Origin: Glycera tridactyla
Lineage: Eukaryota
Reading direction: 5' to 3'
NCBI GenBank assembly: GCA_965644265.1
Contig: OZ286471.1
Coordinates: forward strand, 46,686,001-46,750,000
DNA: 64,000 bases
Below are positions 1-63,774 of the stretch, piece after piece (within the stretch, counting starts at the first letter, position 1; each line of letters begins with the position of its first letter). The position numbers and the translations under genes are program-made. The notes under the pieces were generated by a model. It did no database searches. It was not told the origin of the DNA and was given only the letters and a program-made list of their open reading frames with translations.

Positions 1-57
1 TTCCATGGTGCTACACTACCGAACCCGGAATGGATCGCCTCTGGGGCAACTGCGAAG
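1..57 (+). CDS. FN2 exon, 3' part only (PWCYTTEPGMDRLWGNCE)
   Basis: Frame begins cca tgg tgc tac at base 3; donor G|GTACAT at 57/58; the 5' end lies outside the window. Confidence 0.85.
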
Positions 58-3000
58 GTACATAACTACATGTCACACTAAAATGGAACACGAACTTGTC
101 CATCGTTCTCGATTAAAAATGCATCCTTTTTCACCTACTTGTTTCTATGTAACTTATCAGAATACATCCCAAACTATTCCACATTAGGTTTGGATTGTTG
201 GAAGAAATGACTCTCTTTATGAATTATACATTCATTCTAGGCATACAGGGAAAAATTGATTTCGTACAGGTGAATGTCTCGATGTATCCAACGTATTGAC
301 AATCAGACCAGAAGGTACTTTCTAACGATACCACATCCCTGATATACATCCCATGAGTTCCCGAGGTGTCTATTTGGACTCATTGACCATCACATCTCAG
401 TTTTCGTGGCAAAATCACAAACAGTCCCATGAAAATCCTTATCTGTGGTCTCATTTGTATTGGATTATATGTGTGAGAGGTGCTGTCGAGGTATATCACC
501 ATCGAAAAATGCACCCAGTTAAGCAAATTACTGATCGCAAAGATTGATCTGCATTGTCCTGTGGCGGGAATCAATTATATGGTACCTTGGACTGAATAGT
601 ATATGTAGATATCAAACACCCTTATCTAGGTGATGAAACCACACATTTCCTTTTGTAATTGTATTAAACGAACAATTGATCATCACCGTCCTGACATCCA
701 GTTCGGGATATTTGTTGATGGGTAGATATATAGACCTCAGAGCCATATGGTAATTCTATTGTTCCCACCAGTATTCGTATCCGTTTTTGTTATGACAACC
801 TGTATTTTGGGTTGGAAACGTGTAAAGGTCTAGCTTATGAATAATATGAACGTTCTGTTATGAATTTGTTCACATTTCAGAGGAGGTATGTGGTTCCCCT
901 CCGCCGGAAATTACCTCTAGCACAATCAAAGTGTCAATGCAATCGCCAGACATTACTACTAGTTCTTTAAGACCATCAGTGCAATCAACTACGCTACTGG
1001 CAACATCATCCTCGACATCGGACTCATGTTTTATTTCCACAATAGGTGGAACAGCAGGCAACTCAATATGCATGTTCCCATTCAAATACAGGGGTACGGT
1101 CTATATTGATTGCACAACACGTGATAATTACGGAGTTGCGTGGTGTTACACAACAAATTCCGGGACTGATCGATTGTGGGGAAATTGTCAAGGTAGATGA
1201 ACATTGGATTATGCTTTCTAACCAAAGCATAGCTCCAGTAACACAATTGCATTCCCCAATGAGCAAATTTATATCCTAATCTTTAGTGCACGCGAAATTA
1301 ACCAGATTTTCCATTGCAGAAATTTGCCTCTTTTCATAATATTTTGGAACCATATTTGAAGTTCATCGCTGGATCTGTTGATGATTTGTTGATGACGATG
1401 CAATCACCACCAATGTTTTCAATCGAATGTCACCTTATTAGGACGAAATATATGGGGAAGAAAGTTCTTTCCTGTATTGGATCCATTCATATAGAGGATG
1501 AAGTCTAGCATCATAAATTCAAATGTTCTTATATCTTCAATAAAGTGATTGGCAGGTATTCGTATTATAGATTCCTGATATTCAGATATACATCCACGAT
1601 ATGTTTTGTTGGGTAGACGTATTGACAACATCATACTGGTGATTCCACATTTTCCCCACGATATGTTCAACAATTTCCATCATGCCGTCTTGTACCTTTG
1701 ACTGTGCAATCCTATAAAATATCCCAAACAAATCTGATTATCAACGTCCTTCGTTAGCTTCAGTAATACATGAAAACAGCATACCCACATACTGTGTATA
1801 ATTATCCCATCATCACCAACGCATGTATGTCTCAACATAGCCAAGATGTTGCCGAGAAGATGGGAGACAACCAGCCTCCCAAACTTGTCTGTCAAATTTC
1901 TTTCTCCGACTTTCATCTCATTGTTTCATCTGTTCTCTTTATACAAAGTTTACTTATATCATTATTACAATACTATCCACATAAAATACTTCCTTATATG
2001 AAAGTCAGTGGGACGAAATGTTGAACACAGCCCCGTGTATTCTTTCGATATAATTCATGCGAATGAAAGCATCCATTCGCCATTATATTTATTCATACGT
2101 TCTACTCTGAATTAGATTAAGCATAACACTATCTTTCAAAAGGTGCAAATTGATATTAGAGAAGGAATAAAGCACACCTACCTCATCGGAGTTTCTTGCC
2201 ATGATTGTATTGAAATTATCCACAACACTTCACATATTATATTGATGTGCGCATTTGAATTTCAGAGGAGGTTTGTGGGTCAATTCCACCAACTACAAGC
2301 ACAACAACAATGCCAAGTACATCAACACAAACATCATCTACAATAACACAGGAGTACTGTTACATTCCCACCACAGACGGAACAGCAGGCACCTCTGTTT
2401 GCGTCTTTCCATTTTTCTACAAGGGGACCGTATATTATGAATGCACAACTCGAGATTACAATGGAGTACCCTGGTGCTACACTACAGAATCACCACAAAG
2501 AGATCACCTGTGGGGTGTTTGTCAAGGTAGATTACACTACAATATTTACTATATCGAAATAACAGACTAAGTCTCTAACCATCCACATGTGGGGGCGGTT
2601 GTTTAACCCTGACACAAGATGCATAATTATTCACGCAATTACATCCTTCACCGCGATGCAGATTGTCTGAAATGAGCCGACTAACCAATATTGTACAAGT
2701 AACAATCCATTGCCTATAATACAGCACAAGCAACAATGTCTCGATGTTTTGGTGATGGAACCTGTGATGAATGATGGTATCGACAGAAGGAGGGATTATA
2801 AGTATCTGTCATTAATTAGACACAGTAATCCTCCAGATGTTTGTAATCATACTGGGATTGATTTTTCCTGGCTCTTGTTCACGACATCTGGATGAATAAC
2901 GTATCTCCCCGGGTCCCAGGTTCTACATCAATGTCGCACAACATCAATTAGTGATCCTTGATCTGATGGGTGCCTTCGACTTTTGGTGTTTAGAATTCAT

Positions 3001-6000
3001 CACCGGACATGTAGCAGTAGACAGATCTTTGCTGATCACGGTAGGTGGGGTGGGGGTGGGGAGGGGGGGGGGGGTCGGTCTGTAGTAAATGTTCGACTAT
3101 GTATATGACATGGTCTTCGCAATATTCATGAATGGGTATATGCTTTTACTAATTGGAGAGAATTGCGGAGTTTGTGGCCCCTACATCCCACCTCATGTGA
3201 TTCTCAGTTTGCAGTAGCAGATATTCGCTGTGAAGATAATCCGATGACCTGAAGTGGAATGTTTCATTTAGGGAACTGAAGTTGTAGTTTTGGAGTTTCT
3301 TAGGCCAGTCCGCTGGTCATGTCACCTGGTTGACCACTTCACCAGATGTTCAATAATCCAGGTATCAGCCACCATTTCCGCTCCTGAGTTTGATCAGATG
3401 ACGAACTTGCATTAATTGAACACTATGTTGTGCATTGACCAGATGATTCCACTTCGATATGGTATGGTGCATGCTTGTTATCTGTGTACTTCAATATTGA
3501 AAACGAGTGGCATGAATTTTAGTGAAGAGAATGTTGTGAGACCGTGTAGTGCGTCATCACTTGATGTGTATAGATGTATTCCATGTCGATCTTGTATTGC
3601 AATCTATACATGTGTGTGTGTGAGGGGGGGCGGAGTATGTGTGTATGTGACTGTGTGTGTTTGTGTGTATACGTGCATATGCGTGTGACTACACATAGTG
3701 TCAACTCTAGCACCGAGTATCGAATCCTGTACTCAGTCATTTCACAACTTTGTGCATCCTGTTTGTGTACACCAGCATGCTTATAGACCAGTATAAATGT
3801 GAGTTCAGGTTGCTACGTAACGTGTGATGTGTGGTGCGTCTGAGAATGAGAGAATGAAAGGAGATTACTTTAAGGCACCTCATTAAAGCCATCTTGCCAT
3901 ATGTACAGTGAACCCCTAATGAAACTTATTACTTGCTGCATCGCTCCTCCTTTAGGGTCCTAGAGTGTTTGGACGGGACTTGCGGCTGGTCTGGTGGATC
4001 CTCTCAAATCAGTCTTTATATTCATGGGAGAAGCATTTTGGGCGACCCAAGAATGAGGAACACATTGTTGACAACATAATTTCTGATACTCGGCAAGATC
4101 AGGGTATAAGACATGTTTGTCATCTGCCCGAAGACGTCTATGTGATCTTTGCGGCTCCGTGAATGCACTCCAGGATTGCCAGGGTAGTCTGTGGACTTGA
4201 TGAATTGTCGCCTTCTATTGATGACGAAGAAAGGGGGAGTCTTGAATGATTCCACCTATACCCATTGCATGGACATTTCATTGCAGCCCAAATTATGCAT
4301 AATCATCATAAACGATCCAGTCGACCACCAAGAACAGTCCCCGATGTTTACGGTACTGGAGAAAAATGACAATTGGAATGGTTCACTCTATTTCAAATGT
4401 ATTCGGCCACTAATTGGGATTTGGCAAAGGTTTCATAGAGTAGATGTAGTGGTGTGTTTGGCTTGTTGTATGAAAGGATGTTGAATGGATGTGATGAATA
4501 CCTGAAATCGTCAATTATCTGGCTAGGATGACTGTTATATCAGTGGAATGTCATGAGATGATCATGTTCCTCGAGGGGTGGTTCTACTAGCAGGGATATG
4601 CTGATAATTCTATTCATCTTACATATATTTCTGCTTTCTCCTCTGCATTCATGCATTCATTTGATACAGATTTTTTCTAATTTTAACGCTTCATCAGAGG
4701 AGATTTGTGGCACACTGCCAACTTCTACTACAGTGTTAACAACGCCACCATCGACAACCGAGTGTGAGGGATGGGTTCCGACAATTGGTGGAAACGCTAA
4801 TGTACCCTCCTTCTGTTTGTTTCCTTTCGTCTACAAGAGCAAGATTTACTATTCATGTACCGCCGTTGGTCATGATCAGCTGTGGTGTTATACTGAACAG
4901 GAGAATGTTTGGGGTAATTGCTTAGAGAAGGTATGTGGTCCTCGCCCAACAGTGGCGTCCACAACGGCTACCACACCACCTTCTACGATGATAATCACCA
5001 CCCCTGTCGATTGTGAAGGCGCTTTCTATGTGCCTACGTATGGGGGAAACGGCGGCGAAGCCAATTGTCACCTTCCTTTCACCATCGAAGGCAAGACCTA
5101 CAATGACTGTGTGGACCTTGGAAATGATGGGAGCTTCACGTGGTGCCCTGTCACTGATAATTATTTTCAGGACTTTTTGTGGGGAATTTGTCTAGGTCAG
5201 TGGTCTTTTTCGATCTGCATGCGTGCATGTGTATGTTGTCTGAACTGGGTTCAATCAATCCATCAGATTAGATTTCATTGACATCTATATTCCAAGATAT
5301 TTGACATGGTGTGTGTTTACATGGTCTGCCAAATCATCGACCTACCACAATCCATGACTGGTCTTATGAGATATTTACGTATGAGATGTTTTTGCATACT
5401 GAGAGGGAATACCGAGGTTATATACCATTCCCCGTTGTGTACTGCATGAACAATGCCTTCCCAACAAGTTGATGATCAGCCATATTTCAGGGCTAGTCAG
5501 ATAAGATCATCACCATCCAAAATTCTTTAAAAAACAAGAACCCACGGCATGATTATCACATTGAAGCTGGTGAATGTCAGCAATAGCGAATCACCCTTTT
5601 GTGCATTGGTTTCGTTTTTACCCATTCTATATCTGACATGTCTATACCTCCACTCTAGTTCCACCATATCTATCTCACAACATTGGATGCATTGTCTGAA
5701 TTATCGAGGATTCTTCTGTAAAGGTGGATCATTTTTCATCGTAACATCGACACTTCGACTGACTCTCTTGGTATGCCAAGATTTATTTGGCAATATGTGT
5801 GGTACAAGAGTTGTGGTATGAACATATGTGGTATTTCTTTTATTTCGACACTTGCACACATGACGCCACACTATACCAGATAGCCGGTTATATTGCGGCT
5901 ATCCCCAAGTGCCTAGGACCTTTATAAAGTGATTGCTGGGTGAAGGTCTGTGGACACCACAAGCCACACTTACGTTCCGCCATTCCATCGATCTTCACAT

Positions 6001-23287: not shown

Positions 23288-23338
<51 letters not shown>

Positions 23339-35736: not shown

Positions 35737-35826
<90 letters not shown>

Positions 35827-53800: not shown

Positions 53801-56800
53801 AACTATGTGGTCAACTTCCACGAAAATCATAGGGCCTTGACACATGGGACAATAGTCTGCGTTAATGTAAGAGAAGTTTCCATGGAAACTTGCAAAAATG
53901 CTGAATTTTGACATATTTCAGCTCACGTGATCGAGAAAACTTCCATCAATAATCTGGGCCCTATGGTTTTCTATTAGGGCCTTGTGGGTTGTATATTAAT
54001 ATGAACTCTAATCTCATGCGGAGGGGCAGGAAGGGCCTGTACAAATTGAAAAAGCGTGATTTTTCACACACTTTTGGTCATTTGTCCTTGGTTACCATAG
54101 CAACCATGGAGCAAAGAACATGAAGGTCTCTCGGAAATATCCTTGTGAGTCATATGATATAATGGCATCATTTTGTCATGCATCTTGTACATATATGTCA
54201 ACTGAGTGGTGAATTTTGATTTCCAGCTTAATTTCAAATGGTTACCATGGCAACCAGTGACTCTGCATTTGGGAGAGCAGTATAGTAACCAGATTCTTCA
54301 GCTGTCGTGTGTACACCACATTGACATATCTTCATGTTATTGATGGCTGGATTGAAAGTACTGTGGTACACAGGCTGACAAGGGCTAAATCTCCATTCAT
54401 GCTATTAATTACACTGCGTATTACGATGCCACTGGCAGATGCATTTTGTCCCATAAATGTATGAAGACGTTTTTTCGGGACCTACCCACATGTCCGAAAA
54501 GAGATCTCAGCATCCTCAAAGTGTGTCCCATTAACCAGATTTCACTTCATCCTGACTTGACGATATTCTCCAACTAATGTTCATTTTCTGTACTGTGGGG
54601 GAAATTGCATTTTTCCCCATTTCCTATCTCACTGACCTGCGATTTGATTAATTGAGTACCATCCTGTTGAGGGGGTGGCAATGCTTGGGTCCTGTAGGGA
54701 TCACATTTTGGTGATATTTTCCAGCATTGGTTTGTGGTCAGCCACGACCAACCACAGCACCGGCAAAAACTACAACAGCCAGTGATTGTTTCATCCCAAC
54801 ACATGGAGGTACCGCAGGTGACTCTGTATGTATCTTCCCGTTCGACTACAGGGGTGTCACATACACTGGCTGCACGACCATGGACAACGATGGTGACCCC
54901 TGGTGCTACACTTCATATGACTATAGTAACGATCATCTCTGGAGTAACTGCTTGGGTAGGCAGTCATTTATCGTTCACCTCATATTTAACATTAAACGTT
55001 CATCATTGTCAAACTTGCGATATCATGGCATATCCAATGACTCACTTTAAAAACTCAAAGAACACACAGAAATTATAGAATTACCAGATCTCACTAACCG
55101 AATTTTGACATAGTTGATGTATTAGCAGGTAGAGAGATTCCTAGGTGTTATGGAGAGGTCTTTTGTACTGTCCAGATCATCAGTGTCCCTAGTGAGTCCT
55201 GAAAAAAATGATTGATTTAGTCTCAAGGAGCACCAATTGCTCTTTTTAGAATTGGTCTGTGGACGACCACGACCTACAACGGTTACCACAGGAACAACCA
55301 CGGGCAGAGATTGTTGGATCCCAACCAATGGGGGTACAGCCATCCAGAGGTCGGTCTGTATCTTCCCCTTCTCCTACAAGGGAGTCACCTACACCAGCTG
55401 CTCCACAGTCGACAATAGTGGCTACCCTTGGTGCTATACTTCCTACAACTACCAGAATGATCATCTTTGGGGGAATTGTGGAGGTATGTTCATGATAAAA
55501 AAAAACAGGATCAAATACATACTTGTCTGTTTTTTGAATGGGTCAGTGGGAGTAAATTTGAAATTTTTAAGGTCTAAATAATTTCATTTCCAAATGTGTA
55601 GAGGATAGGTTCAGAGTCAATCCTGTACTATCATATAGGTCACGCCTCCTCCATCTATACCTTGGGTTCAAGCTTGGAGAGGTCTGCCAGTGACTATAGA
55701 TGCCAAGTTTTTTGAGCAGCACGAGTGAGCCAACAGATAGAAAACATTTCAATGGTATACCATACTGGCCAAACCTGCCTCATGAAAAATTGCTTATCTA
55801 TATCTTGGTGATGATGTATGAGGAAGACGAGATTTATCTTCAATCCTGTAGTGAAATGATGAATGGTGATTTTTATGGTCAAGTACCATCTGTCACTCAT
55901 ACCAAAATTATATTGGAAAGGATCCTATATATCAGTCAGTATGTCAGTCAGTCTGTCAAGTGTCCGCCAGTCAATCAACAATCAGTCAGTCTCTATTGCT
56001 TAGTCATTCATTCATAAGGTCAGTGTGGCTATGTCATGTGACATGGGATGTTCACATATCGACCCAGTGGAAGGTCTCATAGTTAGCCACTACATCATTG
56101 ATCAATACAATAATCCTCTTGTTTCTACCCATATTAGCTGAACTGGCCTTCCCGTTTATTTTACTGATCTTTCAGCTCTGATGACTGGACAGAATTTTGA
56201 TAAACATTAGACTCCTATGTATCATTGATGAATAGTGAAAGAATATGGGTTTCATTGATGTAAAGGGGGTGAAAATGGGGATTCATTGCTGTGAATGTTA
56301 TTGTCTTGATCTGATTCAGCCTTGGTCTGTGGCCAGCCACGACCAACTACAGCACCAACTATCACTACAACAGGAAGAGATTGCTATATCCCAACAATAG
56401 GAGGCAGTGCACAACAGCCATCGGTGTGCATCTTCCCCTTCACTTACAAGAATATCATTTATACGGGTTGTTCCACAGTTGACAATGGTGGCTACCCTTG
56501 GTGTTACACGTCATATGATTATAGGAATGACCATCTTTGGGGAAACTGCCAAGGTGGGTGTTATGTGCTGCTGATTTGTTCTTCATCGCATCAGAGACAT
56601 GAATGATAACGCTATGGAGGGATTTCCCAATGATATGTTAAGAGATCTTGAAAGCCATACTCATGTATTGAGTGTACTGGAAATACATGATATTGATCAA
56701 CAGGAAAAACATGTGGGAAAAGACCTACTGATCAAAACATATTGTCACATCTGAAGATATAATATATTGATAAAAACAGTGGGGAGTGTGAATGACATAT

Positions 56801-59800
56801 AGATTACCGACTCACAATTTCAAGTGAACAACCCTTTTTGCCAATATTTGCAATTGTGAAAAATCATCTTGTGATTGCAGCTATGATCTGTGGTCAGCCG
56901 CGACCTACAACAGTAGCTTTCCAGACCACCACGGGTGAAGACTGTTTCATCCCAACATATGGTGGCTCAGCTAGCACAGAATCTGTTTGTATCTTCCCAT
57001 TCTCCTACAAGAACACGATATACACGGGATGTTCCACAGAGGACAATAGTGGGGTACCATGGTGTTATACGTCCTATGACTACAAGAACAACCACTTGTG
57101 GGGAAATTGTAGAGGTGCGTCAAGGTAATAGTCTGTAGCAGGCCCTCTTCATTGAGCTTCACTCATGCTCTGCCCTACCAATGGGAGTGTCGATCAGATA
57201 CAAGAAAGAAAATGGAATTAGTGTCGAATCGGTTTGCTCCAGTTAACAATAGTGATGGTACTGCTCACTCATATTCTGGAAACAGATTGACGGATTTTTG
57301 CCATCATGCAAATTCCGAGGTTAAATTCAGTGGATGCTATCCAGTTACCTTTGAAATGTTATATAGTCTCTCGCTTGTTTATCTGCATTGACCGTAATGA
57401 AGGCTAACTCCAATGTAGCTTGTTTTCTGTTTTATCGGGAGATGATCGATTCTGTCAACCTAGTGTTGGAAGCAGAAGATTGACTGAAACTCATAAAACA
57501 AGGCCTGCTGTCAGCTATATCTGCCAAATTTGTTACATGCATGTTGTAATACTTGCTGATTCTATGCGTCTCGGGCTCCAGTCTTTCCCATAGTCAGTCA
57601 TGTCAACAATAGGATCATTCGTATCATTGTATAGCGGTAGAGGTGTGTCTGAACTGACAGCTACGTCCACCTGATTACCCTTCTCGTTCCCATCATCCTG
57701 TCTGTAGCGAGTGATGCCTGCAGGTTAACGCACATGGGAACGATTGGCATACACAAACGTCTGAATTTGTGAATGTCCTGAAATCTGAGCAATTCGATAA
57801 ATTTTTCGTGAGATTTTTTTTGTTGATACCAACATTCGCTAATAACAAGTACCTGAATATCAATACCTCTCTTGAGAGTGATTCAGAACCAATACTTTTT
57901 CAAATGTAGGAATAAGTAAAAGGTTGCAAATGCTGTCAAAGTCTTCACCCAGATTGTCATCATGAGTTATGTCAATAAGAGACGAAGTATCTCAATATGA
58001 ATTGGTGACTATTTTACAGAGTTGGTTTGTGGTAGGCCTCGCCCAGTTTCCGCTGCGTTATCCACGACCACTCAGTCCAACTGTTACATCCCAACTACTG
58101 GAGGGACAGCCGGACAACCATCTGTCTGTATCTTCCCTTTCTCCTATCGAGATGTGATCTATACTGGATGCTCCACTGTGGACAATAGTGGATACCCTTG
58201 GTGCTACACTTCTTATGACTACAGAAATGACCACCTCTGGGGTAATTGCCAAGGTATGCCTCTGACATGAGCGAAGTCATGAACGCTTCGATATTGCTGA
58301 ATTTTGGAATATTTCCCTCTCGGGATATAGTTACATGGGTTGTCTAGGGAAAATTAGAATAAGTGAGTGAGCAAGCGGGCAGAGGAGTGAGTAAGTTGGG
58401 GAGTGAGTGGAATTGGGTGATTGTGCAAATGTGTCAGTATTTGGCTGGGCAAGTCAATGATTGTGTTTATGATCCAATTCCGTAATCTGCCCGGCATGAT
58501 TGTTTTCGTCTGTACCAACAATCTCTCCTTCTAGAATTGAGATGTGATGGTGAAAGGCCCACTACAGCTGCAACAGCAACAACGACAGGCAGTGACTGCT
58601 GGATTCCAACATCAGGTGGCACTGCTCTCTATGAGTCTGTTTGTATATTTCCATTCTCTTACCGTGATGTGATCTATACGGGCTGCACTACTGTCGATAA
58701 TGGTCGGACACCATGGTGCTATACTTCATATAACTACGAGAACGACCATCTCTGGGGCAACTGTGGAGGTAGGAATATCGATAGTGTAAGGCCAGCTGAA
58801 AGTTGCAGGGGTGAGGTCGGTTGGATTATATGTCATGGTGGTAGCAGTTGGGTGATGGTGGTATTGATGATGGTGGCGATCGTAGTAGCAGTGATGATGC
58901 TGCCAGTAATGGTAGTAATGCTGAAATATTCCATTACTGTCCATTTTTGAAATGTTGATGGTATTCCTGCTTCTTTCCTCACCTTTTGTTGATGTAGTAA
59001 TTGCGTGATTAGGTTGCTAGGGATGAGATTAGGCACTGATGAGAGTGTATGAAAGTATGACGATAGTGATAATTGGTAATGATGCTGGCACATTGCTAGT
59101 GGTCTCACATGTCTTATGGGAAAGTGAGGCAATTCAATATATAATGTATAGATGGTGATGATATGAGAATTGATAAATGCTTCTGTGTTGCAATCCTGCA
59201 ACCCAAGCTACAGTATCCCTGTTACTCATCATCCTATGGCTAATTACATGGGTTCATAAGCTGTAAACCCTGCTTTTAGCGTTGGTCTGTGGCCAACCCA
59301 GACCCCGGTCCCGGGCACCCCAGACCACCACGGCCACTGATTGCTTCATTCCCACCCATGGTGGTACAGCAGGCGACTCTGTATGTATATTCCCCTTCGA
59401 GTACAGGGGTGAGATATATACGGGGTGTACCACAGTGGATAATGGCGATGACCCCTGGTGCTACACTTCATATAACTATAAACAGGATCACCTGTGGAGC
59501 AACTGCTGGGGTATGCAGTGGTTTGGCCCTCCCGTTACCATTCACTTTGTAGGTTCTCAAATGCAAAACATGAATCTGATTGGAAATTGAAAAGAACAAG
59601 AATATGATCTGGCATATCTCGAGTAAAATACTCATCCACAAATACGAGATGGGTTCGCCATCCCATGCAGTAAGCCTGTGAAGTGAATGGATATGGGGAG
59701 TCACACCCACTGAGTATGGCATACTAACTACCTGGACTAACCTCTTAGTACTCAGATACGGAAACATGGAAGCTTTACACTATGTGAGAGCTACAACGAA

Positions 59801-62800
59801 CATCGAGTCCGGTCAATAGGAATGTCATACTAACTGTGAAGATTAATCCCTTCATAGCACCATGCAAACAAATGTAGTTTATCACAAGCGACACAAAACA
59901 CTGAAGAATCGACAAGATGAAGGTAGTAGTGTTGTACACTGCAGCCCTGTAGTGGTAATCAATACGATGTGGGGATTAAAATAACACCAAATTTCTGTGA
60001 ATAATTGCTTCATCTCCTTACCAATGTGAACACATCTTGAGGCAGTCTCTTTTTTCATCAGTACATATAGCCGCTATATAACGAAAAGTAATCAGAATCA
60101 TCACCTTATTTGTTCATCAATCTACTCAGTCTGTCAAAGGCGAACCAATCACCTACCACCCGAGATGAGAAGATTGCCGCCCCAGTACTTGTTGATGACC
60201 ACCACATAAGAATACATTGAAAGAGGTGACTCAACTTCACACCATAGAAGTGATCACTAATGCCAACAAATCAACACTTTCGCTACCTGCAGCAATATTT
60301 GATGTGTTTCCTACCTTTTTGATGGCCTATTGAAGATGCATTCCACCCCATGTCGAGATTATATTAGGCTCCTCACTTTGGCATTGGTATGTGGCGGAGA
60401 GCGCCCAACCACTTCAGCCATTGTTGCAATAAACAGGAGTGACTGCCGGATCCACACTACTGAAGGAACTGCTCTGTCCAACCAAGTTTGCATCTTTCCT
60501 GCTGTGTACAAGATCGTCATCATTACTGGATGTTCCACTGAAGATACTGGCGACTACCTCTGGGATTATACATCATACAACTACAAAGATGACGAACTGT
60601 GGGGGAACTAGGCAGGTCTGCCAAGATTGATGAAATGTGCCAAGGCCAGCAATAACAATTATATTTGCATCCGATGAGAAGTTTGCAAAAAAAGAAAGAC
60701 ATGTGTGGTCAATTGCAAAGACAGGCATCAAGCAAGAATCTGTGATAAACTTAGCCATGTGTTGGCAAGGCTCACATGTGGGAAGGAATGATTCTGATAT
60801 TCCCCTTTCAGTTCGTCTTGGGATGACATAAGAGGAAATCATGGTTCGCTGATACATAGTAGTCAGTGTTTAGACGAATATTACCTTCCACAATCATGGG
60901 CGGTGAGTCGTTGAAGTGTCGGGATGAAGGGATGATGACCTCATGATTGTTCCACTGTTTTCATATTATTAGTGTGTGGTCCGACCACCTCCGTTAGTGA
61001 ATTTCACATCACAAAACAAGGTGGGACATCAGGGCAAATTTTTCTCTGTATCATTTCATTCTACTACAAGAACTATCCACAATAGCTGCTTCTCTGTGGA
61101 CAGCAGTGGCACACCTTAAGGCTACACCTGATATGACTACAGGAATGACTACTTATGAGATTACTTAACAAATGGCATAATCATCATCCCTTTGGTTCGT
61201 GCCAGCCTGTAAACTTTGAACGACCATCCAATCGACCAGAGCCCCGAAGACTGTTGCATACAAACTTATGGGGGTACAGCAATGGCGGCCTATGTCTGCA
61301 CTTCCGCTTCACATACAATGATACTACATATAGAGGGTGATCAGCAGCTGATGATAGAAACACAACCTGGTTCCAGGTTAGAGGACATCTAGCTATCAAT
61401 GACCACTAACACATGACATACATAATCATCTTGGTTGATACATGCTATCAAACCTTAAACAAGCAAACAGACAGTGCTATACTTCTCACAATTACTGTGA
61501 AGATCATATTTGGGGCAATTGCAGAGGTGTGACAACTGCAGATTCACATTTTTTCACACAGGAGATTGTGTATGTGTTTGTGTGTGGGTGTGTGTCTGTG
61601 TGTGGGGGAGAGGGGGAGAAAGGAAACTCGGAATGGACAGATAGACCATAATATATGAATATCGAATGCTCTTCCCTGAGAACCAGTTTGTTGATATTTC
61701 AATAGCCCTTCTTCACGCATTGATGACTCCTTCTAATCAATCGCAAGAAACGCCAAATATTTCGCTGGTTTTGAACATGGTCATTGTTTTCAGAGTTGGT
61801 CTGTGGCCAGCCACGCCCAACCACTGGCAGTATTGGAACAACTACGAGGGGTGATTGTTGGATTCCAACATACGGCGGTACAGCTGGTCAGTCTGTCTGC
61901 ATCTTTCCTTTCCAATACCGGGGCACCATCTACACAGGCTGCTCCACAGTTGATAATGGTGGCTATTCCTGGTGTTATACCTCCTACAATTATGAGAATG
62001 ATCATCTGTGGGGAAACTGCGAAGGTATGACATTCAACATGTAGAAGTCAAATTGGGGAAATGAAGTTGATGAGTTCAATCCCAACCGCAAGAGTTCGGC
62101 CTTATCCATTTTAGCCATTGTCTTTTTGTAGATCATTTGTGGAACTTTTGAAAATTTTGAGGCCAGTTTTCTCTTGAGCATCCTCTACCTTTATCTCTAT
62201 TTCTTTAGAACAGGTATTCCTGATTCAGCCACAGTTTGTTTTGTTCTCTCACTTAGCAGCCTCTCTACATTTTGGCATCTTCTGACATATGACAAGCTTT
62301 TATGATATTCTGAAGTATTGTGGATAGATACTTGTTTGGAAGCATGATCGGTGATGCTGCTTCCACAATTGTAGCGGTTGTCTGTGGTCAACCACGGCCA
62401 ACCACAGCACCACCTCAGACTACTACTAGAGATGACTGCTGGATCCCTACTACTGGAGGATCTGCGGGCTCCTCTTCAGTGTGTATCTTCCCATTCAGCT
62501 ACAGGAATGTCAGATATACAGGCTGTTCCACTGTCGATAATAGTGGCTACCCATGGTGTTACACCTCGTACAACTATGAAAATGATCATCTTTGGGGCAA
62601 TTGCCAAGGTTAGTTGTGAATGAGACCTATCTTTCCGAGCCTCCCAAGTGAAAACTATACGTTTCTCTTGAATTGTGGTCTTGTGCCGAGGATTGAATTG
62701 TTCAATCGTGAAAAGATATGTACTGTAAGTTCAGATTCTTTATCCAATCACCTAGGTTTATTTGCTTCGACTGATCCTGCATTATTGGTGAATGGGAAAC

Positions 62801-63774
62801 AATCTTTTTCTCATATCATGAATCCGGCAGAGGCTCTGCATGCCTTATATTCTACCGAGATAGGTGTGTGGTATTCTGACTGATATTCGACCAATTTTCA
62901 GCGATGGTATGTGGCCAGCCCCGGCCGACAACCCAGGCTCCTGGGACAACAACCGGTCGGGACTGCTTTATCCCGACTACAGGAGGGTCAGCTGGAGGGC
63001 AATCCGTATGCATCTTTCCTTTCTCCTACAAAGACAGGACTTATAGTGGCTGTTCCACAGAGGATAATGGTGGAATTGCATGGTGTTATACTTCATACAA
63101 TTACAGGAACGACCACTTGTGGGGAAATTGCGGAGGTATGACTAAACAGAGACCTACGTTTTTATATTGAACAGTAGACTCACATTTTTTGGATGATACT
63201 TTTGCTGGGAGTTGGTTTTTTTGAGTTGTATTTCAATCTCGATTGCATCTCCCGGTGGGCATAATATGAGTTGTCCCAGTTTGAAGATTGTGTGTTTTCT
63301 GAGTGCCCAAGTGAAATTCACAACTGTAAAGATTTTTGATATTGTCCATGAGAATTTGTTTTCGTTGATACGACATCAACCATGTTCTTTTTAAAAAGAT
63401 ACATGTAACGGGAACGGATCTTCAGTCTGGTTGATGTGGGTATTGAAGCATCTTTATGCCATTCGAATTTGAATCTAGAGAAACATTTGGATATTGTTTG
63501 AATGATGATTGTCATATCAGAAACTAATTTGTTTCCTCAGCATTGAGATGTGGTGAGCCACGTCCAACAACTCCGGCTGTCAGGTCCACTACCCGAGAAG
63601 GCTGTTGGTACTCCACCTATGGTGGTACAGCAGGCCAAGCATCTAGCTGCATATTTCCCTTCTCTTATAAGAATGAGTTGTATGTATCCTGCTCCACTGC
63701 GGACAATGGAAATGTTCCCTGGTGCTATACATCATACAACTACGCTGAGGACCATCTCTGGGGCAATTGCGGAG
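1..63774 (+). CDS. Giant multi-exon gene (or two adjacent paralogous genes) encoding a poly-FN2-like protein with Thr/Pro-rich linkers; 45 intact exons, 66 domains, about 5,450 aa within the window, open at both ends
   Basis: Repeated motif GG(T/S)A-x2-3-S(V/I)C(I/V)FPF-x-Y-x-G/N-x2-Y-x2-C-(S/T)-x2-DN-x-G-x-(P/A)WCYTS-x2-Y-x2-DHLWGNC. This matches the FN2 pattern C-x-FPF-x-Y...C...WC...WG-x-C known from MMP-2/9 and fibronectin. Each coding block lies between a pyrimidine-AG acceptor and a GT donor, all introns are phase 1, and all complete exon lengths are multiples of 3. Joining the exons into one transcript is inferred. Confidence 0.85.
881..1192 (+). CDS. FN2 exon, 1 domain with long Ser/Thr linker
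   Basis: tttcag|AG GAG GTA TGT ... TGT CAA G|gtagat; 312 nt. Confidence 0.9.
2266..2526 (+). CDS. FN2 exon, 1 domain
   Basis: tttcag|AG GAG GTT TGT ... TGT CAA G|gtagat; 261 nt. Confidence 0.9.
2750..4560 (-). mobile_element. Possible very decayed L2/CR1-type LINE relic
   Basis: Only faint minus-strand motifs, for example PSVDTIIH resembling the RT AFDTVDH and *NVH resembling the endonuclease GDFNVH; no ORF. Needs a translated repeat search. Confidence 0.2.
4698..5195 (+). CDS. FN2 exon, 2 domains
   Basis: catcag|AG GAG ATT TGT ... TGT CTA G|gtcagt; 498 nt. Confidence 0.88.
9149..9610 (+). CDS. FN2 exon, 2 domains
   Basis: tttcag|AC AGG GTA TGT ... TGT GAA G|gtgaat; 462 nt. Confidence 0.9.
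12370..17223 (+). CDS. Giant FN2 exon, 18 domains (1,618 codons)
   Basis: ttgcag|CT AGG GTT TGT ... TGC CAA G|gttggt; 4,854 nt open frame; 18 WCY...WG-x-C motifs counted in the 1636-aa ORF. Confidence 0.92.
12640..14606 (+). repeat. In-frame intra-exonic tandem duplication, period 1,011 bp (337 aa, 4 FN2 domains), about 2 copies
   Basis: cagtgactgacctcccaat at 12721 recurs at 13732. Shadow ORFs also repeat at +1011 (13303/14314, 13434/14445). By eye the copies differ only by scattered substitutions; the end points are approximate. Confidence 0.9.
17560..17900 (-). mobile_element. Possible decayed LINE RT C-terminal fragment
   Basis: Minus strand reads EIWLKGHL, then after a frameshift ENRKHKIRII, reminiscent of W-x4-L-x-LN-x2-KT-x2-II in CR1/L2 RT; weak. 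Confidence 0.2.
18204..18704 (+). CDS. FN2 exon, 2 domains
   Basis: tttcag|AT AAG GAA TGT ... TGT CTG C|gtgagt; 501 nt. Confidence 0.9.
19044..19289 (+). CDS. FN2 exon, 1 domain
   Basis: ctccag|CC CGT ATC TGT ... TGT CTA G|gtcagt; 246 nt. Confidence 0.88.
19581..19862 (+). CDS. FN2 exon, 1 divergent domain
   Basis: ttgtag|AG AAA GTT TGT ... TGT CTT G|gtgcgt; 282 nt. Confidence 0.88.
21117..21599 (+). CDS. FN2 exon, 2 domains
   Basis: tttcag|AG AGG GTC TGT ... TGT GAA G|gtgggt; 483 nt. Confidence 0.88.
23290..23336. repeat. (TA)n microsatellite, about 23 units, preceded by a CA-rich tract
   Basis: Read directly from the sequence. Confidence 0.95.
24465..24707 (+). CDS. FN2 exon, 1 divergent domain
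   Basis: ttacag|AT AAG GTC TGT ... WCSTTPDYFIQQEWGYC CTG G|gtatgt; 243 nt. Confidence 0.88.
25368..25526. other. Assembly gap or masked stretch, 159 N
   Basis: Run of N. Confidence 0.99.
25979..26428 (+). CDS. FN2 exon, 1 domain preceded by a long acidic Ser/Thr-rich segment
   Basis: tttcag|TT TCA AAA TGT ... TGT CAA G|gtatgt; 450 nt. The 5' boundary is less certain because an in-frame ATG lies at 25948. Confidence 0.75.
27850..28700 (-). mobile_element. Possible decayed L2/CR1-type LINE relic (endonuclease-to-RT linker)
   Basis: Minus strand RLYRWRNIDPD (28153-28185), then VLDRTVR and KPW (27995-28003), in the order of the YR..K.ID / LD.HAP / PW motifs of that linker; many frameshifts. 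Confidence 0.3.
29115..29330 (+). CDS. FN2 exon, 1 domain
   Basis: tttcag|AT TTC GTG TGT ... TGT GAG G|gtaagt; 216 nt. Confidence 0.9.
30315..30563 (+). CDS. FN2 exon, 1 domain
   Basis: tttcag|CT GAA ATT TGT ... TGT CAA G|gtatgt; 249 nt. Confidence 0.9.
31020..31238 (+). CDS. FN2 exon, 1 domain
   Basis: tttcag|AG GAA CAA TGC ... TGT CTA G|gtttgt; 219 nt. Confidence 0.88.
   Translation, partial: RNNAVLRFRRQQRQAVISLHMVELLGFPDVYFLSNTKGKLTRTISALLWTMMEHDGAIHPETIRMIISGEIV
31587..31847 (+). CDS. FN2 exon, 1 domain
   Basis: tttcag|CG GAG GTG TGC ... TGT CAA G|gtatgt; 261 nt. Confidence 0.9.
32501..32731 (+). CDS. FN2 exon, 1 domain
   Basis: ttgcag|AT GTG GTT TGC ... CAA G|gtatgt; 231 nt. Confidence 0.9.
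33077..33310 (+). CDS. FN2 exon, 1 domain
   Basis: ttgcag|CT TTG GTC TGT ... AGA G|gtaagc; 234 nt. Confidence 0.9.
33870..34103 (+). CDS. FN2 exon, 1 domain
   Basis: ccgtag|AT ATT GTA TGT ... GGA G|gtgcgt; 234 nt. Confidence 0.9.
34437..34670 (+). CDS. FN2 exon, 1 domain
   Basis: tttcag|AC TTG GTG TGT ... CAA G|gtatgt; 234 nt. Confidence 0.9.
35001..35234 (+). CDS. FN2 exon, 1 domain
   Basis: ttccag|CT TTG GTC TGT ... CAA G|gtatgc; 234 nt. Confidence 0.9.
35737..35826. repeat. (ATG)30 microsatellite, intronic
   Basis: Perfect 90-nt run about 100 nt upstream of the exon at 35928. Confidence 0.97.
35928..36167 (+). CDS. FN2 exon, 1 domain (WSNC subtype)
   Basis: ttatag|AT CTG GTT TGT ... 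GTA G|gtatgt; 240 nt. Confidence 0.9.
36559..36792 (+). CDS. FN2 exon, 1 domain
   Basis: tttcag|AA TTA ATC TGT ... CAA G|gtagaa; 234 nt. Confidence 0.9.
37205..37435 (+). CDS. FN2 exon, 1 domain
   Basis: tttcag|AG ATT GTG TGT ... GAT G|gtaggc; 231 nt. Confidence 0.9.
37688..37921 (+). CDS. FN2 exon, 1 domain
   Basis: ttgtag|AA TTG ATT TGT ... TTA G|gtagtg; 234 nt. Confidence 0.9.
38171..38401 (+). CDS. FN2 exon, 1 domain
   Basis: ttgcag|CG GTG GTT TGT ... CAA G|gtagga; 231 nt. Confidence 0.9.
38868..39098 (+). CDS. FN2 exon, 1 domain (WSNC subtype)
   Basis: ttgcag|AC TTA GTC TGC ... TAT G|gtagga; 231 nt. Confidence 0.9.
39401..39631 (+). CDS. FN2 exon, 1 domain
   Basis: cttcag|AG CTT GTC TGT ... 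CAA G|gtaggc; 231 nt. Confidence 0.9.
40155..40385 (+). CDS. FN2 exon, 1 domain
   Basis: ttacag|AT ATT GTA TGT ... CGA G|gtgcgt; 231 nt. Confidence 0.9.
41580..42110 (+). repeat. Degenerate tandem repeat, period 178 bp, about 3 copies
   Basis: atggccc..accaccag anchor at 41621, 41799 and 41977. Confidence 0.75.
42209..42957 (+). repeat. Minisatellite, 147-bp unit, 5 copies
   Basis: gaatgccagccatagat anchor at 42209, 42356, 42503, 42650 and 42808; the fourth unit carries an 11-bp insertion. Confidence 0.95.
43826..43912. promoter_or_regulatory. Two inverted YY1-consensus sites flanking an ETS-like core, in a CpG-rich patch
   Basis: CAAGATGGCGGC at 43826-43837, GCCGCCATCTTG at 43901-43912 and CTTCCGG at 43873-43879. 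Function unknown; may belong to a transposon. Confidence 0.35.
44972..46397. repeat. About 1.4-kb (GGT)n/CCAT simple satellite (ggtggtggtccat-like units)
   Basis: Read directly; strongly G/T-rich on the + strand; ends about 100 nt before the acceptor at 46496. Confidence 0.95.
46497..46730 (+). CDS. FN2 exon, 1 domain
   Basis: ttgcag|AT TTG GTA TGT ... CGA G|gtacat; 234 nt. Confidence 0.9.
47040..47270 (+). CDS. FN2 exon, 1 domain
   Basis: ttgtag|CA TTG GTC TGT ... CAA G|gtatga; 231 nt. Confidence 0.9.
47641..47820 (+). pseudogene. Decayed FN2 exon (pseudoexon) with an internal deletion and in-frame stops, but intact splice dinucleotides
   Basis: tttcag|AT CTG GTG TGT GGG CAG reads LVCGQ...RDC. 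The GG..CIFPF segment is deleted, and in-frame TGA (47736) and TAA (47742) follow. The end reads CYTSYNHEDDHLWGNCG C|gtgagt; 180 nt. Confidence 0.85.
48185..48418 (+). CDS. FN2 exon, 1 domain
   Basis: ttacag|AG TTG GTC TGT ... AGA G|gtgata; 234 nt. Confidence 0.9.
48583..48813 (+). CDS. FN2 exon, 1 domain
   Basis: ttacag|AT TTG GTT TGT ... GGA G|gtatgg; 231 nt. Confidence 0.9.
49190..49423 (+). CDS. FN2 exon, 1 domain
   Basis: cttcag|GC TTG GTT TGT ... GGA G|gtatgt; 234 nt. Confidence 0.9.
50349..52024 (+). mobile_element. Helentron-associated (HINE/DINE-1-like) non-autonomous element with internal tandem repeats
   Basis: 5' palindrome tatgtctacccc-ctgat-ggggtagacata followed by a GTCY microsatellite (gtccgtctgtccgtctgtctgtc). 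Internal repeats at about 50920-51140 (period about 158) and about 51220-51540. The 3' end has ggggagacata, a hairpin agtgagg..cttcact and ctagtt at about 51980-52024, with TT at both junctions. Confidence 0.65.
50757..50915. other. Assembly gap or masked stretch, 159 N
   Basis: Run of N, the same length as the gap at 25368. Confidence 0.99.
52867..53043. mobile_element. Tc1/mariner-pogo-type MITE, 177 bp
   Basis: TA|CAGTGAAACCTGC ... GCAGGTTTCATGG|TA: imperfect terminal inverted repeats with TA flanks; internal gagagac(c) repeated four times. Confidence 0.75.
54725..54955 (+). CDS. FN2 exon, 1 domain (WSNC subtype)
   Basis: ttccag|CA TTG GTT TGT ... TTG G|gtaggc; 231 nt. Confidence 0.9.
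55250..55483 (+). CDS. FN2 exon, 1 domain
   Basis: ttttag|AA TTG GTC TGT ... GGA G|gtatgt; 234 nt. Confidence 0.9.
56320..56553 (+). CDS. FN2 exon, 1 domain
   Basis: attcag|CC TTG GTC TGT ... CAA G|gtgggt; 234 nt. Confidence 0.9.
56881..57114 (+). CDS. FN2 exon, 1 domain
   Basis: ttgcag|CT ATG ATC TGT ... AGA G|gtgcgt; 234 nt. Confidence 0.9.
58020..58253 (+). CDS. FN2 exon, 1 domain
   Basis: ttacag|AG TTG GTT TGT ... CAA G|gtatgc; 234 nt. Confidence 0.9.
58535..58768 (+). CDS. FN2 exon, 1 domain
   Basis: ttctag|AA TTG AGA TGT ... GGA G|gtagga; 234 nt. Confidence 0.9.
59280..59510 (+). CDS. FN2 exon, 1 domain (WSNC subtype)
   Basis: ttttag|CG TTG GTC TGT ... TGG G|gtatgc; 231 nt. Confidence 0.9.
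60382..60615 (+). pseudogene. Decayed FN2 exon: acceptor lost, two Cys lost, stop codon
   Basis: ctttgg|CA TTG GTA TGT has GG where AG is expected. It still spans 234 nt to G|gtctgc. WCY has become WDY, and the final Cys codon has become TAG (60609-60611). Confidence 0.85.
60969..61167 (+). pseudogene. Heavily decayed FN2 exon
   Basis: Reads LVCGPTT..GGTSGQ..LCIISFYYKN, then after a frameshift SCFSVDSSGTP*GYT*YDYRNDYL*; boundaries approximate. Confidence 0.7.
61190..61526 (+). pseudogene. Decayed FN2 exon fragments
   Basis: EDCCIQTYGGTAMAAYVC, frameshift, FTYNDTTYRG*SAADDRNTTW; a separate 3' fragment CYTSHNYCEDHIWGNCR G|gt lies at 61475-61526. This could be one interrupted copy or two. Confidence 0.7.
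61794..62024 (+). CDS. FN2 exon, 1 domain
   Basis: tttcag|AG TTG GTC TGT ... GAA G|gtatga; 231 nt. Confidence 0.9.
62375..62608 (+). CDS. FN2 exon, 1 domain
   Basis: ttgtag|CG GTT GTC TGT ... CAA G|gttagt; 234 nt. Confidence 0.9.
62902..63135 (+). CDS. FN2 exon, 1 domain
   Basis: tttcag|CG ATG GTA TGT ... GGA G|gtatga; 234 nt. Confidence 0.9.
63541..63774 (+). CDS. FN2 exon, 1 domain
   Basis: cctcag|CA TTG AGA TGT ... GGA G|gtaggt; 234 nt; ends in a donor, so the gene continues beyond the window. Confidence 0.9.

What the first reader, a model, noticed from the sequence alone, without database searches (positions are those of the whole stretch)
1..63774. A protein with at least 66 tandem FN2-like domains on mucin-like linkers
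Seen in the sequence: 66 four-Cys FN2-like domains over 45 in-frame exons, about 5,450 aa, open at both window ends and with no other domain type. Established: well-characterised FN2 proteins carry few copies (fibronectin 2, MMP-2/MMP-9 3, mannose-receptor family 1, factor XII/HGF activator 1, seminal BSP proteins 2, ELSPBP1 4). Inference: this is a giant, highly multivalent extracellular beads-on-a-string protein, comparable in design to the kringle IV array of apolipoprotein(a). It could be a matrix, mucus, adhesive or pathogen-binding scaffold. I know of no characterised protein with this architecture, but I cannot search to confirm that.
Basis: partly seen in the sequence, partly recalled or inferred. 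Interest (0 to 1): 0.9.

Follow-up and report, generated by a model that had tools for sequence, protein, structure and literature searches.

The report
Giant tandem FN2-domain gene segment
The whole 64-kb window is an internal slice of one very large animal gene whose 45 exons encode 66 fibronectin type II beads joined by short threonine-rich strings; the array is far longer than any described FN2 protein, but its function is untested.

Summary
On the + strand, 45 exons splice into a 5,450-aa open frame with no stop and 66 FN2 units. All exons have AG/GT borders, are phase 1-1 and have lengths divisible by three. Pfam finds fn2 and nothing else.

One correction: every unit has six cysteines, not four. 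An extra N-terminal Cys and a Cys in an invariant C-x4-C after the last FN2 Cys probably staple the termini, as in kringles.

Both N gaps lie inside introns, so the frame is safe, but exons could be hidden in them.

The copies are old and under purifying selection: synonymous sites are saturated (pS about 0.8), pN is about 0.19, and introns cannot be aligned. Two exons have specific orthologues in another assembly. AlphaFold2 and Foldseek give a confident FN2 fold with disordered linkers.

The novelty claim weakens. Uncharacterised predicted proteins with 10-26 matched FN2 stretches already exist in fish, amphioxus, shrimps and protists. None is characterised and none approaches 66.

The scan's first-stage readers noted the same kind of array on neighbouring DNA of this genome. 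I could not check those notes. Function is inferred: a multivalent matrix or surface binder.

The parts
3..57 (+). exon 0 (partial, runs off the window start): C-terminal piece of one FN2 unit
   Evidence: unit HMM positions 40-58, E 4.6e-6; phase-1 GT donor
881..1192 (+). exon 1, 1 FN2 unit
   Evidence: AG/GT, 312 nt, phase 1-1; Pfam fn2
2266..2526 (+). exon 2, 1 FN2 unit
4698..5195 (+). exon 3, 2 FN2 units
9149..9610 (+). exon 4, 2 FN2 units; specific orthologue P0084 in GCA_013332675.1
   Evidence: 68% identity over 155 aa against 46% or less to other exons
12370..17223 (+). exon 5, 4,854 nt, 18 FN2 units with Ser/Thr/Pro linkers of 14-49 aa; contains a 1.2-kb four-unit internal duplication at 90% identity
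   Evidence: Pfam fn2 E 2.2e-192, 18 stretches
18204..18704 (+). exon 6, 2 FN2 units
19044..19289 (+). exon 7, 1 FN2 unit
19581..19862 (+). exon 8, 1 FN2 unit
21117..21599 (+). exon 9, 2 FN2 units; specific orthologue P0142 in GCA_013332675.1
   Evidence: 65% identity over 159 aa against 42% or less to other exons
24465..24707 (+). exon 10, 1 FN2 unit
25368..25526 (.). assembly gap 1, inside intron 10 (24708-25978)
25979..26428 (+). exon 11, 1 FN2 unit preceded by an atypical 89-aa acidic linker
29115..29330 (+). exon 12, 1 FN2 unit
30315..30563 (+). exon 13, 1 FN2 unit
31020..31238 (+). exon 14, 1 FN2 unit
31587..31847 (+). exon 15, 1 FN2 unit
32501..32731 (+). exon 16, 1 FN2 unit
33077..33310 (+). 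exon 17, 1 FN2 unit
33870..34103 (+). exon 18, 1 FN2 unit
34437..34670 (+). exon 19, 1 FN2 unit
35001..35234 (+). exon 20, 1 FN2 unit
35928..36167 (+). exon 21, 1 FN2 unit
36559..36792 (+). exon 22, 1 FN2 unit
37205..37435 (+). exon 23, 1 FN2 unit
37688..37921 (+). exon 24, 1 FN2 unit
38171..38401 (+). exon 25, 1 FN2 unit
38868..39098 (+). exon 26, 1 FN2 unit
39401..39631 (+). exon 27, 1 FN2 unit
40155..40385 (+). exon 28, 1 FN2 unit
46497..46730 (+). exon 29, 1 FN2 unit
47040..47270 (+). exon 30, 1 FN2 unit
47541..47822 (+). decayed pseudo-exon in intron 30 (frameshifted, middle of the unit lost)
   Evidence: unit HMM positions 38-59 only; 5' half reads in another frame
48185..48418 (+). exon 31, 1 FN2 unit
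48583..48813 (+). exon 32, 1 FN2 unit
49190..49423 (+). exon 33, 1 FN2 unit
50757..50915 (.). assembly gap 2, inside intron 33 (49424-54724)
54725..54955 (+). exon 34, 1 FN2 unit
55250..55483 (+). exon 35, 1 FN2 unit
56320..56553 (+). exon 36, 1 FN2 unit
56881..57114 (+). exon 37, 1 FN2 unit
58020..58253 (+). exon 38, 1 FN2 unit
58535..58768 (+). exon 39, 1 FN2 unit
59280..59510 (+). exon 40, 1 FN2 unit
60358..60608 (+). decayed pseudo-exon in intron 40 (the W-C Cys and FPF are lost; a stop follows WGN)
61002..61526 (+). decayed, frameshifted pseudo-exon fragments in intron 40
61794..62024 (+). exon 41, 1 FN2 unit
62375..62608 (+). exon 42, 1 FN2 unit
62902..63135 (+). exon 43, 1 FN2 unit
63541..63774 (+). 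exon 44, 1 FN2 unit; ends at a phase-1 donor, so the gene continues beyond the window

Best explanation
The window is an internal segment of one very large animal gene. The scan's other notes call the genome annelid; I could not verify that from this window. The segment encodes a secreted beads-on-a-string glycoprotein.

Shown here: 45 symmetric phase-1 exons splice into 5,450 aa holding 66 FN2 modules. Each bead is a canonical FN2 fold of 56-66 aa carrying two extra, invariant cysteines. C1 lies 14-18 residues before the first FN2 Cys, and C6 lies in an invariant C-x4-C after the last. The beads are joined by Thr/Pro/Ser-rich linkers (median 17 aa) that are predicted disordered. The copies are ancient and individually kept under purifying selection.

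Inferred: C1 and C6 form a third, intra-unit disulfide that staples the adjacent N- and C-termini, as in the kringle 1-6 bond, making each bead a rigid loop hanging off the chain. The linkers are O-glycosylated and extended. The protein is extracellular. It works by avidity: many weak aromatic-pocket FN2 sites engage a repetitive ligand. The most likely ligand is collagen of the matrix or cuticle, because the closest solved relatives are the collagen/gelatin-binding FN2 modules of MMP-9, MMP-2 and fibronectin. The result would be cross-linking or coating of a surface or gel.
For: Gene model: all 44 introns are GT-AG, every complete exon has a length divisible by 3, and there are no stops in 5,450 aa. 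The C-x4-C is identical whether encoded within an exon (the 18-unit exon) or across 43 splice junctions, which independently validates the splice sites. Family: Pfam fn2 only. The PDB sequence search is topped by MMP-9 (E 2.5e-40), MMP-2 and fibronectin FN2 modules. Fold: the AF2 unit model has pLDDT 95, and the 50 Foldseek PDB matches listed are all chains of FN2-containing proteins, TM-score 0.60-0.81 (mostly 0.73-0.81), best rmsd about 1.5 A over 55-58 columns. Beads and strings: in the two-unit model the domains have pLDDT 75-92 and linker residues 65-92 are below 50. Residues 3-4 pair with 61-62 within a unit, so the termini are adjacent. Linkers are 28.5% Thr and 53% T+S+P. Selection and age: pS is 0.78-0.81 (saturated) against pN 0.19 in the core and 0.28 in linkers. 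Introns are not alignable. Three decayed pseudo-exons show what unselected copies look like. Conservation: exons 4 and 9 have exon-specific orthologues at 68% and 65% identity in assembly GCA_013332675.1. The same design (six-Cys FN2 plus S/T/P linkers, 16 units in one ORF) occurs in an unrelated ENA contig.
Against: There is no transcript, signal peptide, start, stop or membrane anchor in the window, so 'one gene' and 'secreted' are inferences. Two assembly gaps could hide exons or a misjoin. The ligand is unknown. The Phe of the vertebrate 'WGFC' motif, which as I recall lines the binding pocket, is Asn in 51 of 65 units, and 'WCAT' is 'WCYT' in 61 of 65, so collagen binding may not be conserved. 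Linkers are short and there are only 5 N-glycosylation sequons, so the protein is not a classical mucin.
Confidence: 0.75

Rival explanations
1. This is not one giant protein. The array would be a tandem cluster of several shorter FN2 genes, or one locus from which alternative splicing picks subsets of the frame-compatible cassette exons. No single product would then carry all 66 units.
For: All exons are symmetric phase 1-1, so any subset splices in frame. The array has distinct blocks: units 3-30 have C1 16-18 residues before the first FN2 Cys and include the multi-unit exons, whereas units 1-2 and 31-65 have it 14-15 residues before (units 29 and 33 break the rule), and within-block identity is 54% against 72%. 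There are three long introns (6.1, 5.3 and 4.0 kb) and two gaps where boundaries could hide.
Against: Every exon begins with the C6 cysteine that completes the previous unit, so any exon used as a first coding exon would carry an orphan Cys. A heuristic scan found no convincing signal-peptide exon with a phase-1 donor in any intron. No in-frame terminal exon or other domain was found.
Confidence: 0.2
2. The protein is the same, but its role is immune or microbe-binding or in mucus: a multivalent agglutinin whose diversified FN2 pockets recognise phosphorylcholine-type or glycan ligands on microbes or particles, rather than collagen.
For: The FN2 pairs of seminal plasma protein PDC-109 bind phosphorylcholine (established knowledge; PDC-109 is among the sequence matches). 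The pocket-lining position before the last FN2 Cys differs from collagen-binding modules (Asn in 51 of 65 units). Variable positions cluster in loops (entropy profile). [quoted passage not shown]
Against: There is no sign of diversifying selection: pN/pS is far below 1 in the core. The closest solved relatives by sequence are collagen-binding modules. No expression data exist for this gene.
Confidence: 0.25
3. This is an artefact or dead DNA: an assembly-inflated repeat or a decaying pseudogene array.
For: There are two assembly gaps, three decayed pseudo-exons and one 1.2-kb internal duplication at 90% identity.
Against: Exon copies are at most 77% identical at the DNA level and introns are unalignable, so they are not collapsed or duplicated reads. 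There are 0 stops and 44 of 44 intact splice-site pairs over 16.3 kb of coding sequence. Synonymous sites are saturated while pN is low. Orthologous exons exist in another assembly.
Confidence: 0.03

Closest known systems
Collagen/gelatin-binding FN2 modules of MMP-9, MMP-2 and fibronectin (PDB 1L6J, 1EAK/1CK7, 1J7M, 1E88, 3MQL)
   Same: Same Pfam family and fold. The profile hits them at E 2.5e-40 to 1e-26 with an almost gap-free alignment, and the structural match is TM-score 0.76-0.81. The FPF, Tyr, W-C and Trp aromatic framework is conserved.
   Different: Those proteins carry 2-3 modules inside enzymes or fibronectin; this segment has 66 and no other domain. Each unit here has two extra Cys. 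'WGFC' is mostly 'WGNC' and 'WCAT' is 'WCYT'.
Apolipoprotein(a) kringle IV array, and kringles in general
   Same: The design is the same: many copies of one small disulfide-knotted module joined by Thr/Pro-rich linkers. The six-Cys order, the 'PWCYT' motif and the terminal C-x4-C resemble kringles. The unit profile also hits the C-terminal halves of a 19-stretch kringle-array protein, P0130, at E 4e-30.
   Different: The unit is 56-66 aa rather than about 80. Pfam Kringle does not hit it and no kringle is among the 50 Foldseek matches listed. It works like apo(a) in architecture only and is not a member.
Uncharacterised predicted poly-FN2 proteins: Sardina pilchardus XP_062381919.1 (17 stretches), Branchiostoma belcheri KAI8499649.1 (19, with a Ser/Thr-rich region and a hydrophobic stretch near the C-terminus), Palaemon and Macrobrachium proteins (16-17), dinoflagellate transcripts (up to 26), ENA protein P0007 (16)
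   Same: All are tandem FN2 arrays of more than 10 matched stretches. P0007 has the same six-Cys unit and Ser/Thr/Pro-rich linkers, all in one large ORF, like exon 5 here.
   Different: All are several-fold shorter. Most units have four Cys or sit with other domains. None is characterised. P0007 has C-x7-C rather than C-x4-C.
FN2-only secreted proteins: seminal plasma BSP/PDC-109 (2 FN2) and ELSPBP1 (4 FN2); salmon louse FNII proteins
   Same: These are proteins made essentially of FN2 modules. The louse genome carries 192 FNII domains in 74 genes, and three of those genes are placed in tegumental glands by a cited paper's title.
   Different: They have 1-4 modules per protein, no long array and no clamp cysteines reported.

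Membership tests
Fibronectin type II domain (Pfam PF00040, fn2) | Matches the family HMM above the gathering score | tested here: met
   The big exon scores 623 bits with 18 stretches (cut-off 22.2). All 43 other complete exons match fn2, and only fn2.
Fibronectin type II domain (Pfam PF00040, fn2) | Four conserved Cys with the spacing C-x13-C-x8-10-W-C-x14-C, plus the conserved aromatic residues (FPF, Tyr, Trp) | tested here: met
   Present in 65 of 65 complete units. Invariant or near-invariant columns are listed.
Fibronectin type II domain (Pfam PF00040, fn2) | FN2 fold (two short antiparallel sheets, aromatic pocket) | tested here: met
   AF2 pLDDT 95. The 50 Foldseek PDB matches listed are all chains of FN2-containing proteins, TM-score 0.60-0.81, mostly 0.73-0.81.
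Fibronectin type II domain (Pfam PF00040, fn2) | 1-3 and 2-4 disulfide connectivity; binding of collagen/gelatin or phosphorylcholine | not testable with these tools
   Needs disulfide mapping and binding assays.
Kringle domain (Pfam PF00051) | Matches the family HMM | tested here: not met
   No Kringle hit at E up to 0.01 for the exons scanned, or up to 0.001 for the 43 exons.
Kringle domain (Pfam PF00051) | About 80-residue triple-loop unit | tested here: not met
   Units are 56-66 aa from C1 to C6. No kringle is among the 50 Foldseek matches listed.
Kringle domain (Pfam PF00051) | Six Cys bonded 1-6, 2-4, 3-5 | tested here: inconclusive
   Six invariant Cys in a compatible order, with a kringle-like terminal C-x4-C. 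The model places the N- and C-terminal strands side by side. Bonding itself was not measured.
Gel-forming or membrane mucins | Long PTS domains (hundreds of residues) plus VWD/CK or SEA/TM domains | tested here: not met
   Linkers are 5-89 aa with a median of 17. No VWD, CK, SEA or TM was found in the window. The protein's ends lie outside the window.
Apolipoprotein(a)-type module array | Tandem kringle IV copies followed by a protease domain | tested here: not met
   The modules are FN2, not kringles, and there is no protease domain in the window. This is an architectural analogy only.

The most novel reading that the evidence does not exclude
The 66 units seen here are only about a fifth of one continuous gene. 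Unchecked first-stage notes of this scan report the same one-exon-one-module array directly upstream (at least 43 units) and for about 300 kb downstream (at least 82, 48 and 47 units, then 26 FN2 plus 17 PAN/Apple). If all of this is a single transcript, it would encode roughly 300 clamped FN2 beads and more than 20,000 residues. That would place it among the largest proteins and longest single-domain arrays known, built from a kringle-clamped FN2 form that could be a living intermediate between kringles and vertebrate FN2.
Probability: 0.3. Interest if true: 0.85.

Novelty: new variant of a known kind. Interest (0 to 1): 0.62.

Why it matters
Characterised FN2 proteins carry one to four modules. 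An array of at least 66, kept intact copy by copy over a long time, implies a function that depends on extreme multivalency. Such a function is likely to belong to a major structural or surface material of the animal (cuticle, matrix, mucus or tube).

The invariant extra disulfide pair bears on a specific evolutionary question. Ozhogina et al. (2001, Protein Sci 10:2114) proposed a kringle-to-FN2 relationship; I know that paper only through the reference list and citing text seen. This unit gives a concrete, testable candidate for an FN2 that keeps the kringle-type terminal clamp.

The locus is also a clean natural example of exon-shuffling logic: 44 consecutive phase-1 introns, with each module's last Cys encoded by the next exon.

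Tried and rejected
1. The PROSITE-style FN2 regex found only 4 matches because of the Asn-for-Phe and Tyr-for-Ala changes. I replaced it with HMMs.

2. The search for homologous proteins with the 1,637-aa exon gave only 4 weak hits. The length window and low-complexity words limit it, and this genome's own proteins are not in that database.

3. Identifying assembly GCA_013332675.1 (WGS prefix JAAUYI) through the paper library found nothing. The organism of the orthologous exons, and of the window, therefore stays unverified.

4. Ozhogina et al. 2001 (PMC2374232) is not held.

5. I looked for a period-2 (A/B) higher-order exon repeat, as noted for a neighbouring window. Mean identity is flat at 66.6-68.1% for lags 1-8. 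Only a weak lag-6 pattern appears among exons 34-43.

6. I looked for internal signal-peptide first exons. There were only low-complexity false positives.

7. Intronic ORFs, including the His/Pro/Thr-rich reading of the 1.4-kb TGG-rich satellite on the minus strand, have no Pfam family.

8. There are no Rfam families or tRNAs.

9. The protein-atlas search added nothing beyond FN2 and kringle clusters.

10. Literature searches found no described giant poly-FN2 protein.

Full report
**What is in the sequence**

The window is 42% G+C eukaryotic DNA with two 159-nt N runs. Stop-free stretches carrying Cys and 'WC' motifs are concentrated on the + strand: 49 segments against 13 on the - strand. I built a unit HMM from 17 repeats of the longest open stretch (12339-17249). 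It gives 69 significant hits on the + strand and none on the - strand.

Pfam-A assigns these to fn2 (PF00040) and to nothing else. The long exon scores 623 bits with 18 stretches. All 43 other complete exons match fn2 only.

**Gene model**

Every unit-bearing stretch ends with '...W-G-x-C-xxx-G|GT' and begins with a polypyrimidine tract, then 'AG|NN NNN NNN TGY'. Applying this rule gives 45 exons:
- all have AG/GT borders;
- all are phase 1-1;
- all complete exons have lengths divisible by three.

The splice product is 5,450 aa without a stop and holds 66 units. Exon 0 (3-57) is the tail of a unit, and exon 44 ends at a phase-1 donor (63774), so the gene is open at both ends.

Units per exon are 1 (partial), 1, 1, 2, 2, 18, 2, 1, 1, 2, 1, 1, and then 33 single-unit exons.

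**The N gaps**

Gap 1 (25368-25526) lies in intron 10 (24708-25978). Gap 2 (50757-50915) lies in intron 33 (49424-54724). Nothing that looks coding abuts either gap.

Because all exons are symmetric phase 1-1, the reading frame is independent of gap length. What cannot be excluded is that whole exons are hidden in the gaps, or that a scaffold join there is wrong.

**Correction to the observation: a six-Cys unit**

Between the last FN2 Cys of one unit and the first FN2 Cys of the next there are always exactly two more cysteines (all 64 inter-unit intervals, giving six Cys in each of the 65 complete units):
- C6 is always the fifth residue after the last FN2 Cys, giving an invariant C-x4-C.
- C1 lies 14-18 residues before the first FN2 Cys.

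The intron falls inside the C-x4-C, so each module's sixth Cys is encoded by the next exon. The same C-x4-C is found uninterrupted inside the multi-unit exons, which validates the splice-site choice independently.

'PWCYT' and the terminal C-x4-C are kringle-like. The unit profile also picks up the C-terminal halves of a kringle-array protein (P0130).

**Fold**

AlphaFold2 on a 28-row alignment gives pLDDT 95 over all 62 residues. The 50 Foldseek PDB matches listed are all chains of FN2-containing proteins: MMP-2, MMP-9, fibronectin, mannose receptor, Endo180, PLA2R, DEC-205, factor XII and IGF2R. TM-scores run from 0.60 to 0.81, mostly 0.73-0.81, and rmsd from about 1.4 to 3.2 A. No kringle is among them.

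The PDB sequence search ranks MMP-9, MMP-2 and fibronectin first, with an almost gap-free alignment.

In a two-unit model the beads have pLDDT 75-92, and linker residues 65-92 are below 50. Residues 3-4 pair with residues 61-62 of the same unit. The termini are therefore adjacent. This fits an intra-unit C1-C6 clamp rather than a bond across the linker. It is an inference, because I could not read the model's coordinates.

**Linkers**

The 64 linkers are 5-89 aa long (median 17). They are 28.5% Thr and 53% Thr+Ser+Pro, and make up 26% of the protein. The whole protein has only five N-x-S/T sequons. 'Mucin-like' is fair for the composition but not for the length.

**Age, selection and reality of the copies**

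- Single-unit exons are at most 77% identical at the DNA level.
- Introns do not align with each other.
- Among exons 16-44, Nei-Gojobori pS is 0.78-0.81 (saturated). pN is 0.19 in the core and 0.28 in linkers.
- Three intronic pseudo-exons (about 47541-47822, 60358-60608 and 61002-61526) show the frameshifts and lost Cys or Trp expected without selection.
- Two ORF-called proteins from a fragmented assembly, GCA_013332675.1, match single window exons specifically. P0084 is 68% identical to exon 4, against 46% or less to any other exon. P0142 is 65% identical to exon 9, against 42% or less.

So individual exons predate a species split. The array is not an assembly artefact or a dead repeat. 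Expansion does continue: exon 5 contains a 1.2-kb four-unit duplication at 90% identity.

**Internal organisation**

Units 3-30 (exons 3-9) mostly have C1 16-18 residues before the first FN2 Cys ('C-[ED]-G-Y-I-P'). They have longer linkers, multi-unit exons and 54% mean identity. Units 1-2 and 31-65 mostly have C1 14-15 residues before ('D-C-[FWY]-I-P-T'), with one unit per exon; units 37-65 average 72% identity. Units 29 and 33 are exceptions, with spacings of 17.

I found no period-2 exon pattern. Identity by lag is flat.

**What else is in the window**

Essentially nothing else. Intronic ORFs have no Pfam family. There are no Rfam or tRNA hits. No convincing internal signal-peptide exon turned up. 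Intron 28 holds a 147-bp tandem repeat and a 1.4-kb TGG-rich satellite.

**Comparison with what is known**

An exhaustive profile search of 1.84 billion representative proteins found 4,869 FN2 proteins. Among the best 150 are uncharacterised predictions with many matched FN2 stretches:

| Protein | Matched FN2 stretches |
|---|---|
| Sardine XP_062381919.1 | 17 |
| Amphioxus KAI8499649.1 (also has a Ser/Thr-rich region and a hydrophobic stretch near the C-terminus) | 19 |
| Two shrimp proteins | 16-17 |
| Protist transcripts | 21-26 |
| ENA protein P0007 | 16 |

In P0007 the 16 units are six-Cys, sit on Ser/Thr/Pro linkers and lie in one ORF.

FN2 arrays of more than 10 units exist as predictions, but none is characterised and none comes near 66.

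The paper library holds no description of a giant poly-FN2 protein. The nearest literature is the salmon louse FNII expansion of 192 domains in 74 genes, with three of those genes placed in tegumental glands by a cited paper's title.

**How it most likely works**

Shown: a very long chain of rigid FN2 beads on short flexible Thr/Pro-rich strings, conserved bead by bead.

Inferred:
- secretion and O-glycosylation, from the domain class and linker composition;
- a C1-C6 clamp;
- avidity-based binding of a repetitive ligand.

Collagen is the leading candidate ligand. The closest solved relatives are collagen/gelatin-binding modules, and annelid cuticle is collagenous (general knowledge). The annelid origin itself comes only from other notes of this scan.

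Against collagen: the position before the last FN2 Cys is Asn in 51 of 65 units where vertebrate modules have Phe. A phosphorylcholine-, glycan- or microbe-binding role is a live rival.

**Context from the scan**

First-stage notes, which are unchecked and which I could not read as sequence, report the same array on neighbouring DNA of this genome:
- at least 43 units in the window upstream;
- at least 82, 48 and 47 units in windows downstream;
- FN2 x26 plus PAN/Apple x17 about 250 kb downstream.

Other first readers also proposed a 'kringle-clamped FN2'. I reached that reading before seeing their notes, so the agreement is not independent evidence from a different method.

If all this is one gene, the protein would exceed 20,000 residues. 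I rate that at about 0.3.

**Verdict**

I class it as a new variant of a known kind: an extreme, clamped-FN2 version of the module-array extracellular protein. Interest is 0.62.

Noticed in passing
window 44972-46373: A 1.4-kb imperfect TGG/GTGGTCCATGG-type satellite (G+C 50%, GC skew +0.4) inside the 6.1-kb intron 28. Its minus-strand reading gives long His/Pro/Thr-rich ORFs that have no Pfam family.
   Followed up: partly
window 42203-42958: A tandem repeat of about 147-158 bp, 5 copies at 87-97% identity, in intron 28. The minus-strand ORFs across it have no Pfam family.
   Followed up: partly
window 35737-35826 and 23290-23342: A perfect (ATG)30 microsatellite just upstream of exon 21, and a (TA)26 run in intron 9.
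   Followed up: no
window 13533-14741 vs 12522-13730: A four-unit (1.2-kb) tandem duplication at 90% DNA identity inside the 18-unit exon. Units 8-10 and 12-14 are 94-98% identical at the protein level, so the intronless block is still expanding by unequal exchange.
   Followed up: partly
window 25979-26428: Exon 11 has an atypical 89-aa linker rich in Asp, Glu and Val instead of Thr and Pro. It lies directly downstream of assembly gap 1 and may mark a sub-array boundary.
   Followed up: no
L002:10001-14659 (ENA ERZ22147071, contig ctg30976l): An unrelated 1.09-Mb contig of unknown organism encodes 16 six-Cys FN2 units with Ser/Thr/Pro/Lys-rich linkers in one 4.7-kb ORF. The flanking 10 kb on each side holds no further FN2 units.
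   Followed up: partly
P0130: A 1,867-aa predicted protein made of kringles (19 stretches matched by the FN2 unit profile) on short Thr/Ala/Pro linkers. It is an apo(a)-like kringle array of unknown source.
   Followed up: no
L004 (Logan SRR14460572 contig, 3,122 nt): An mRNA-like contig encodes a 975-aa protein (P0002) with a hydrophobic, signal-like N-terminus, 6 FN2 units (some with six Cys) on poly-Thr linkers, and several PAN/Apple domains. The scan's notes report the same FN2+PAN combination about 250 kb downstream of this window.
   Followed up: partly
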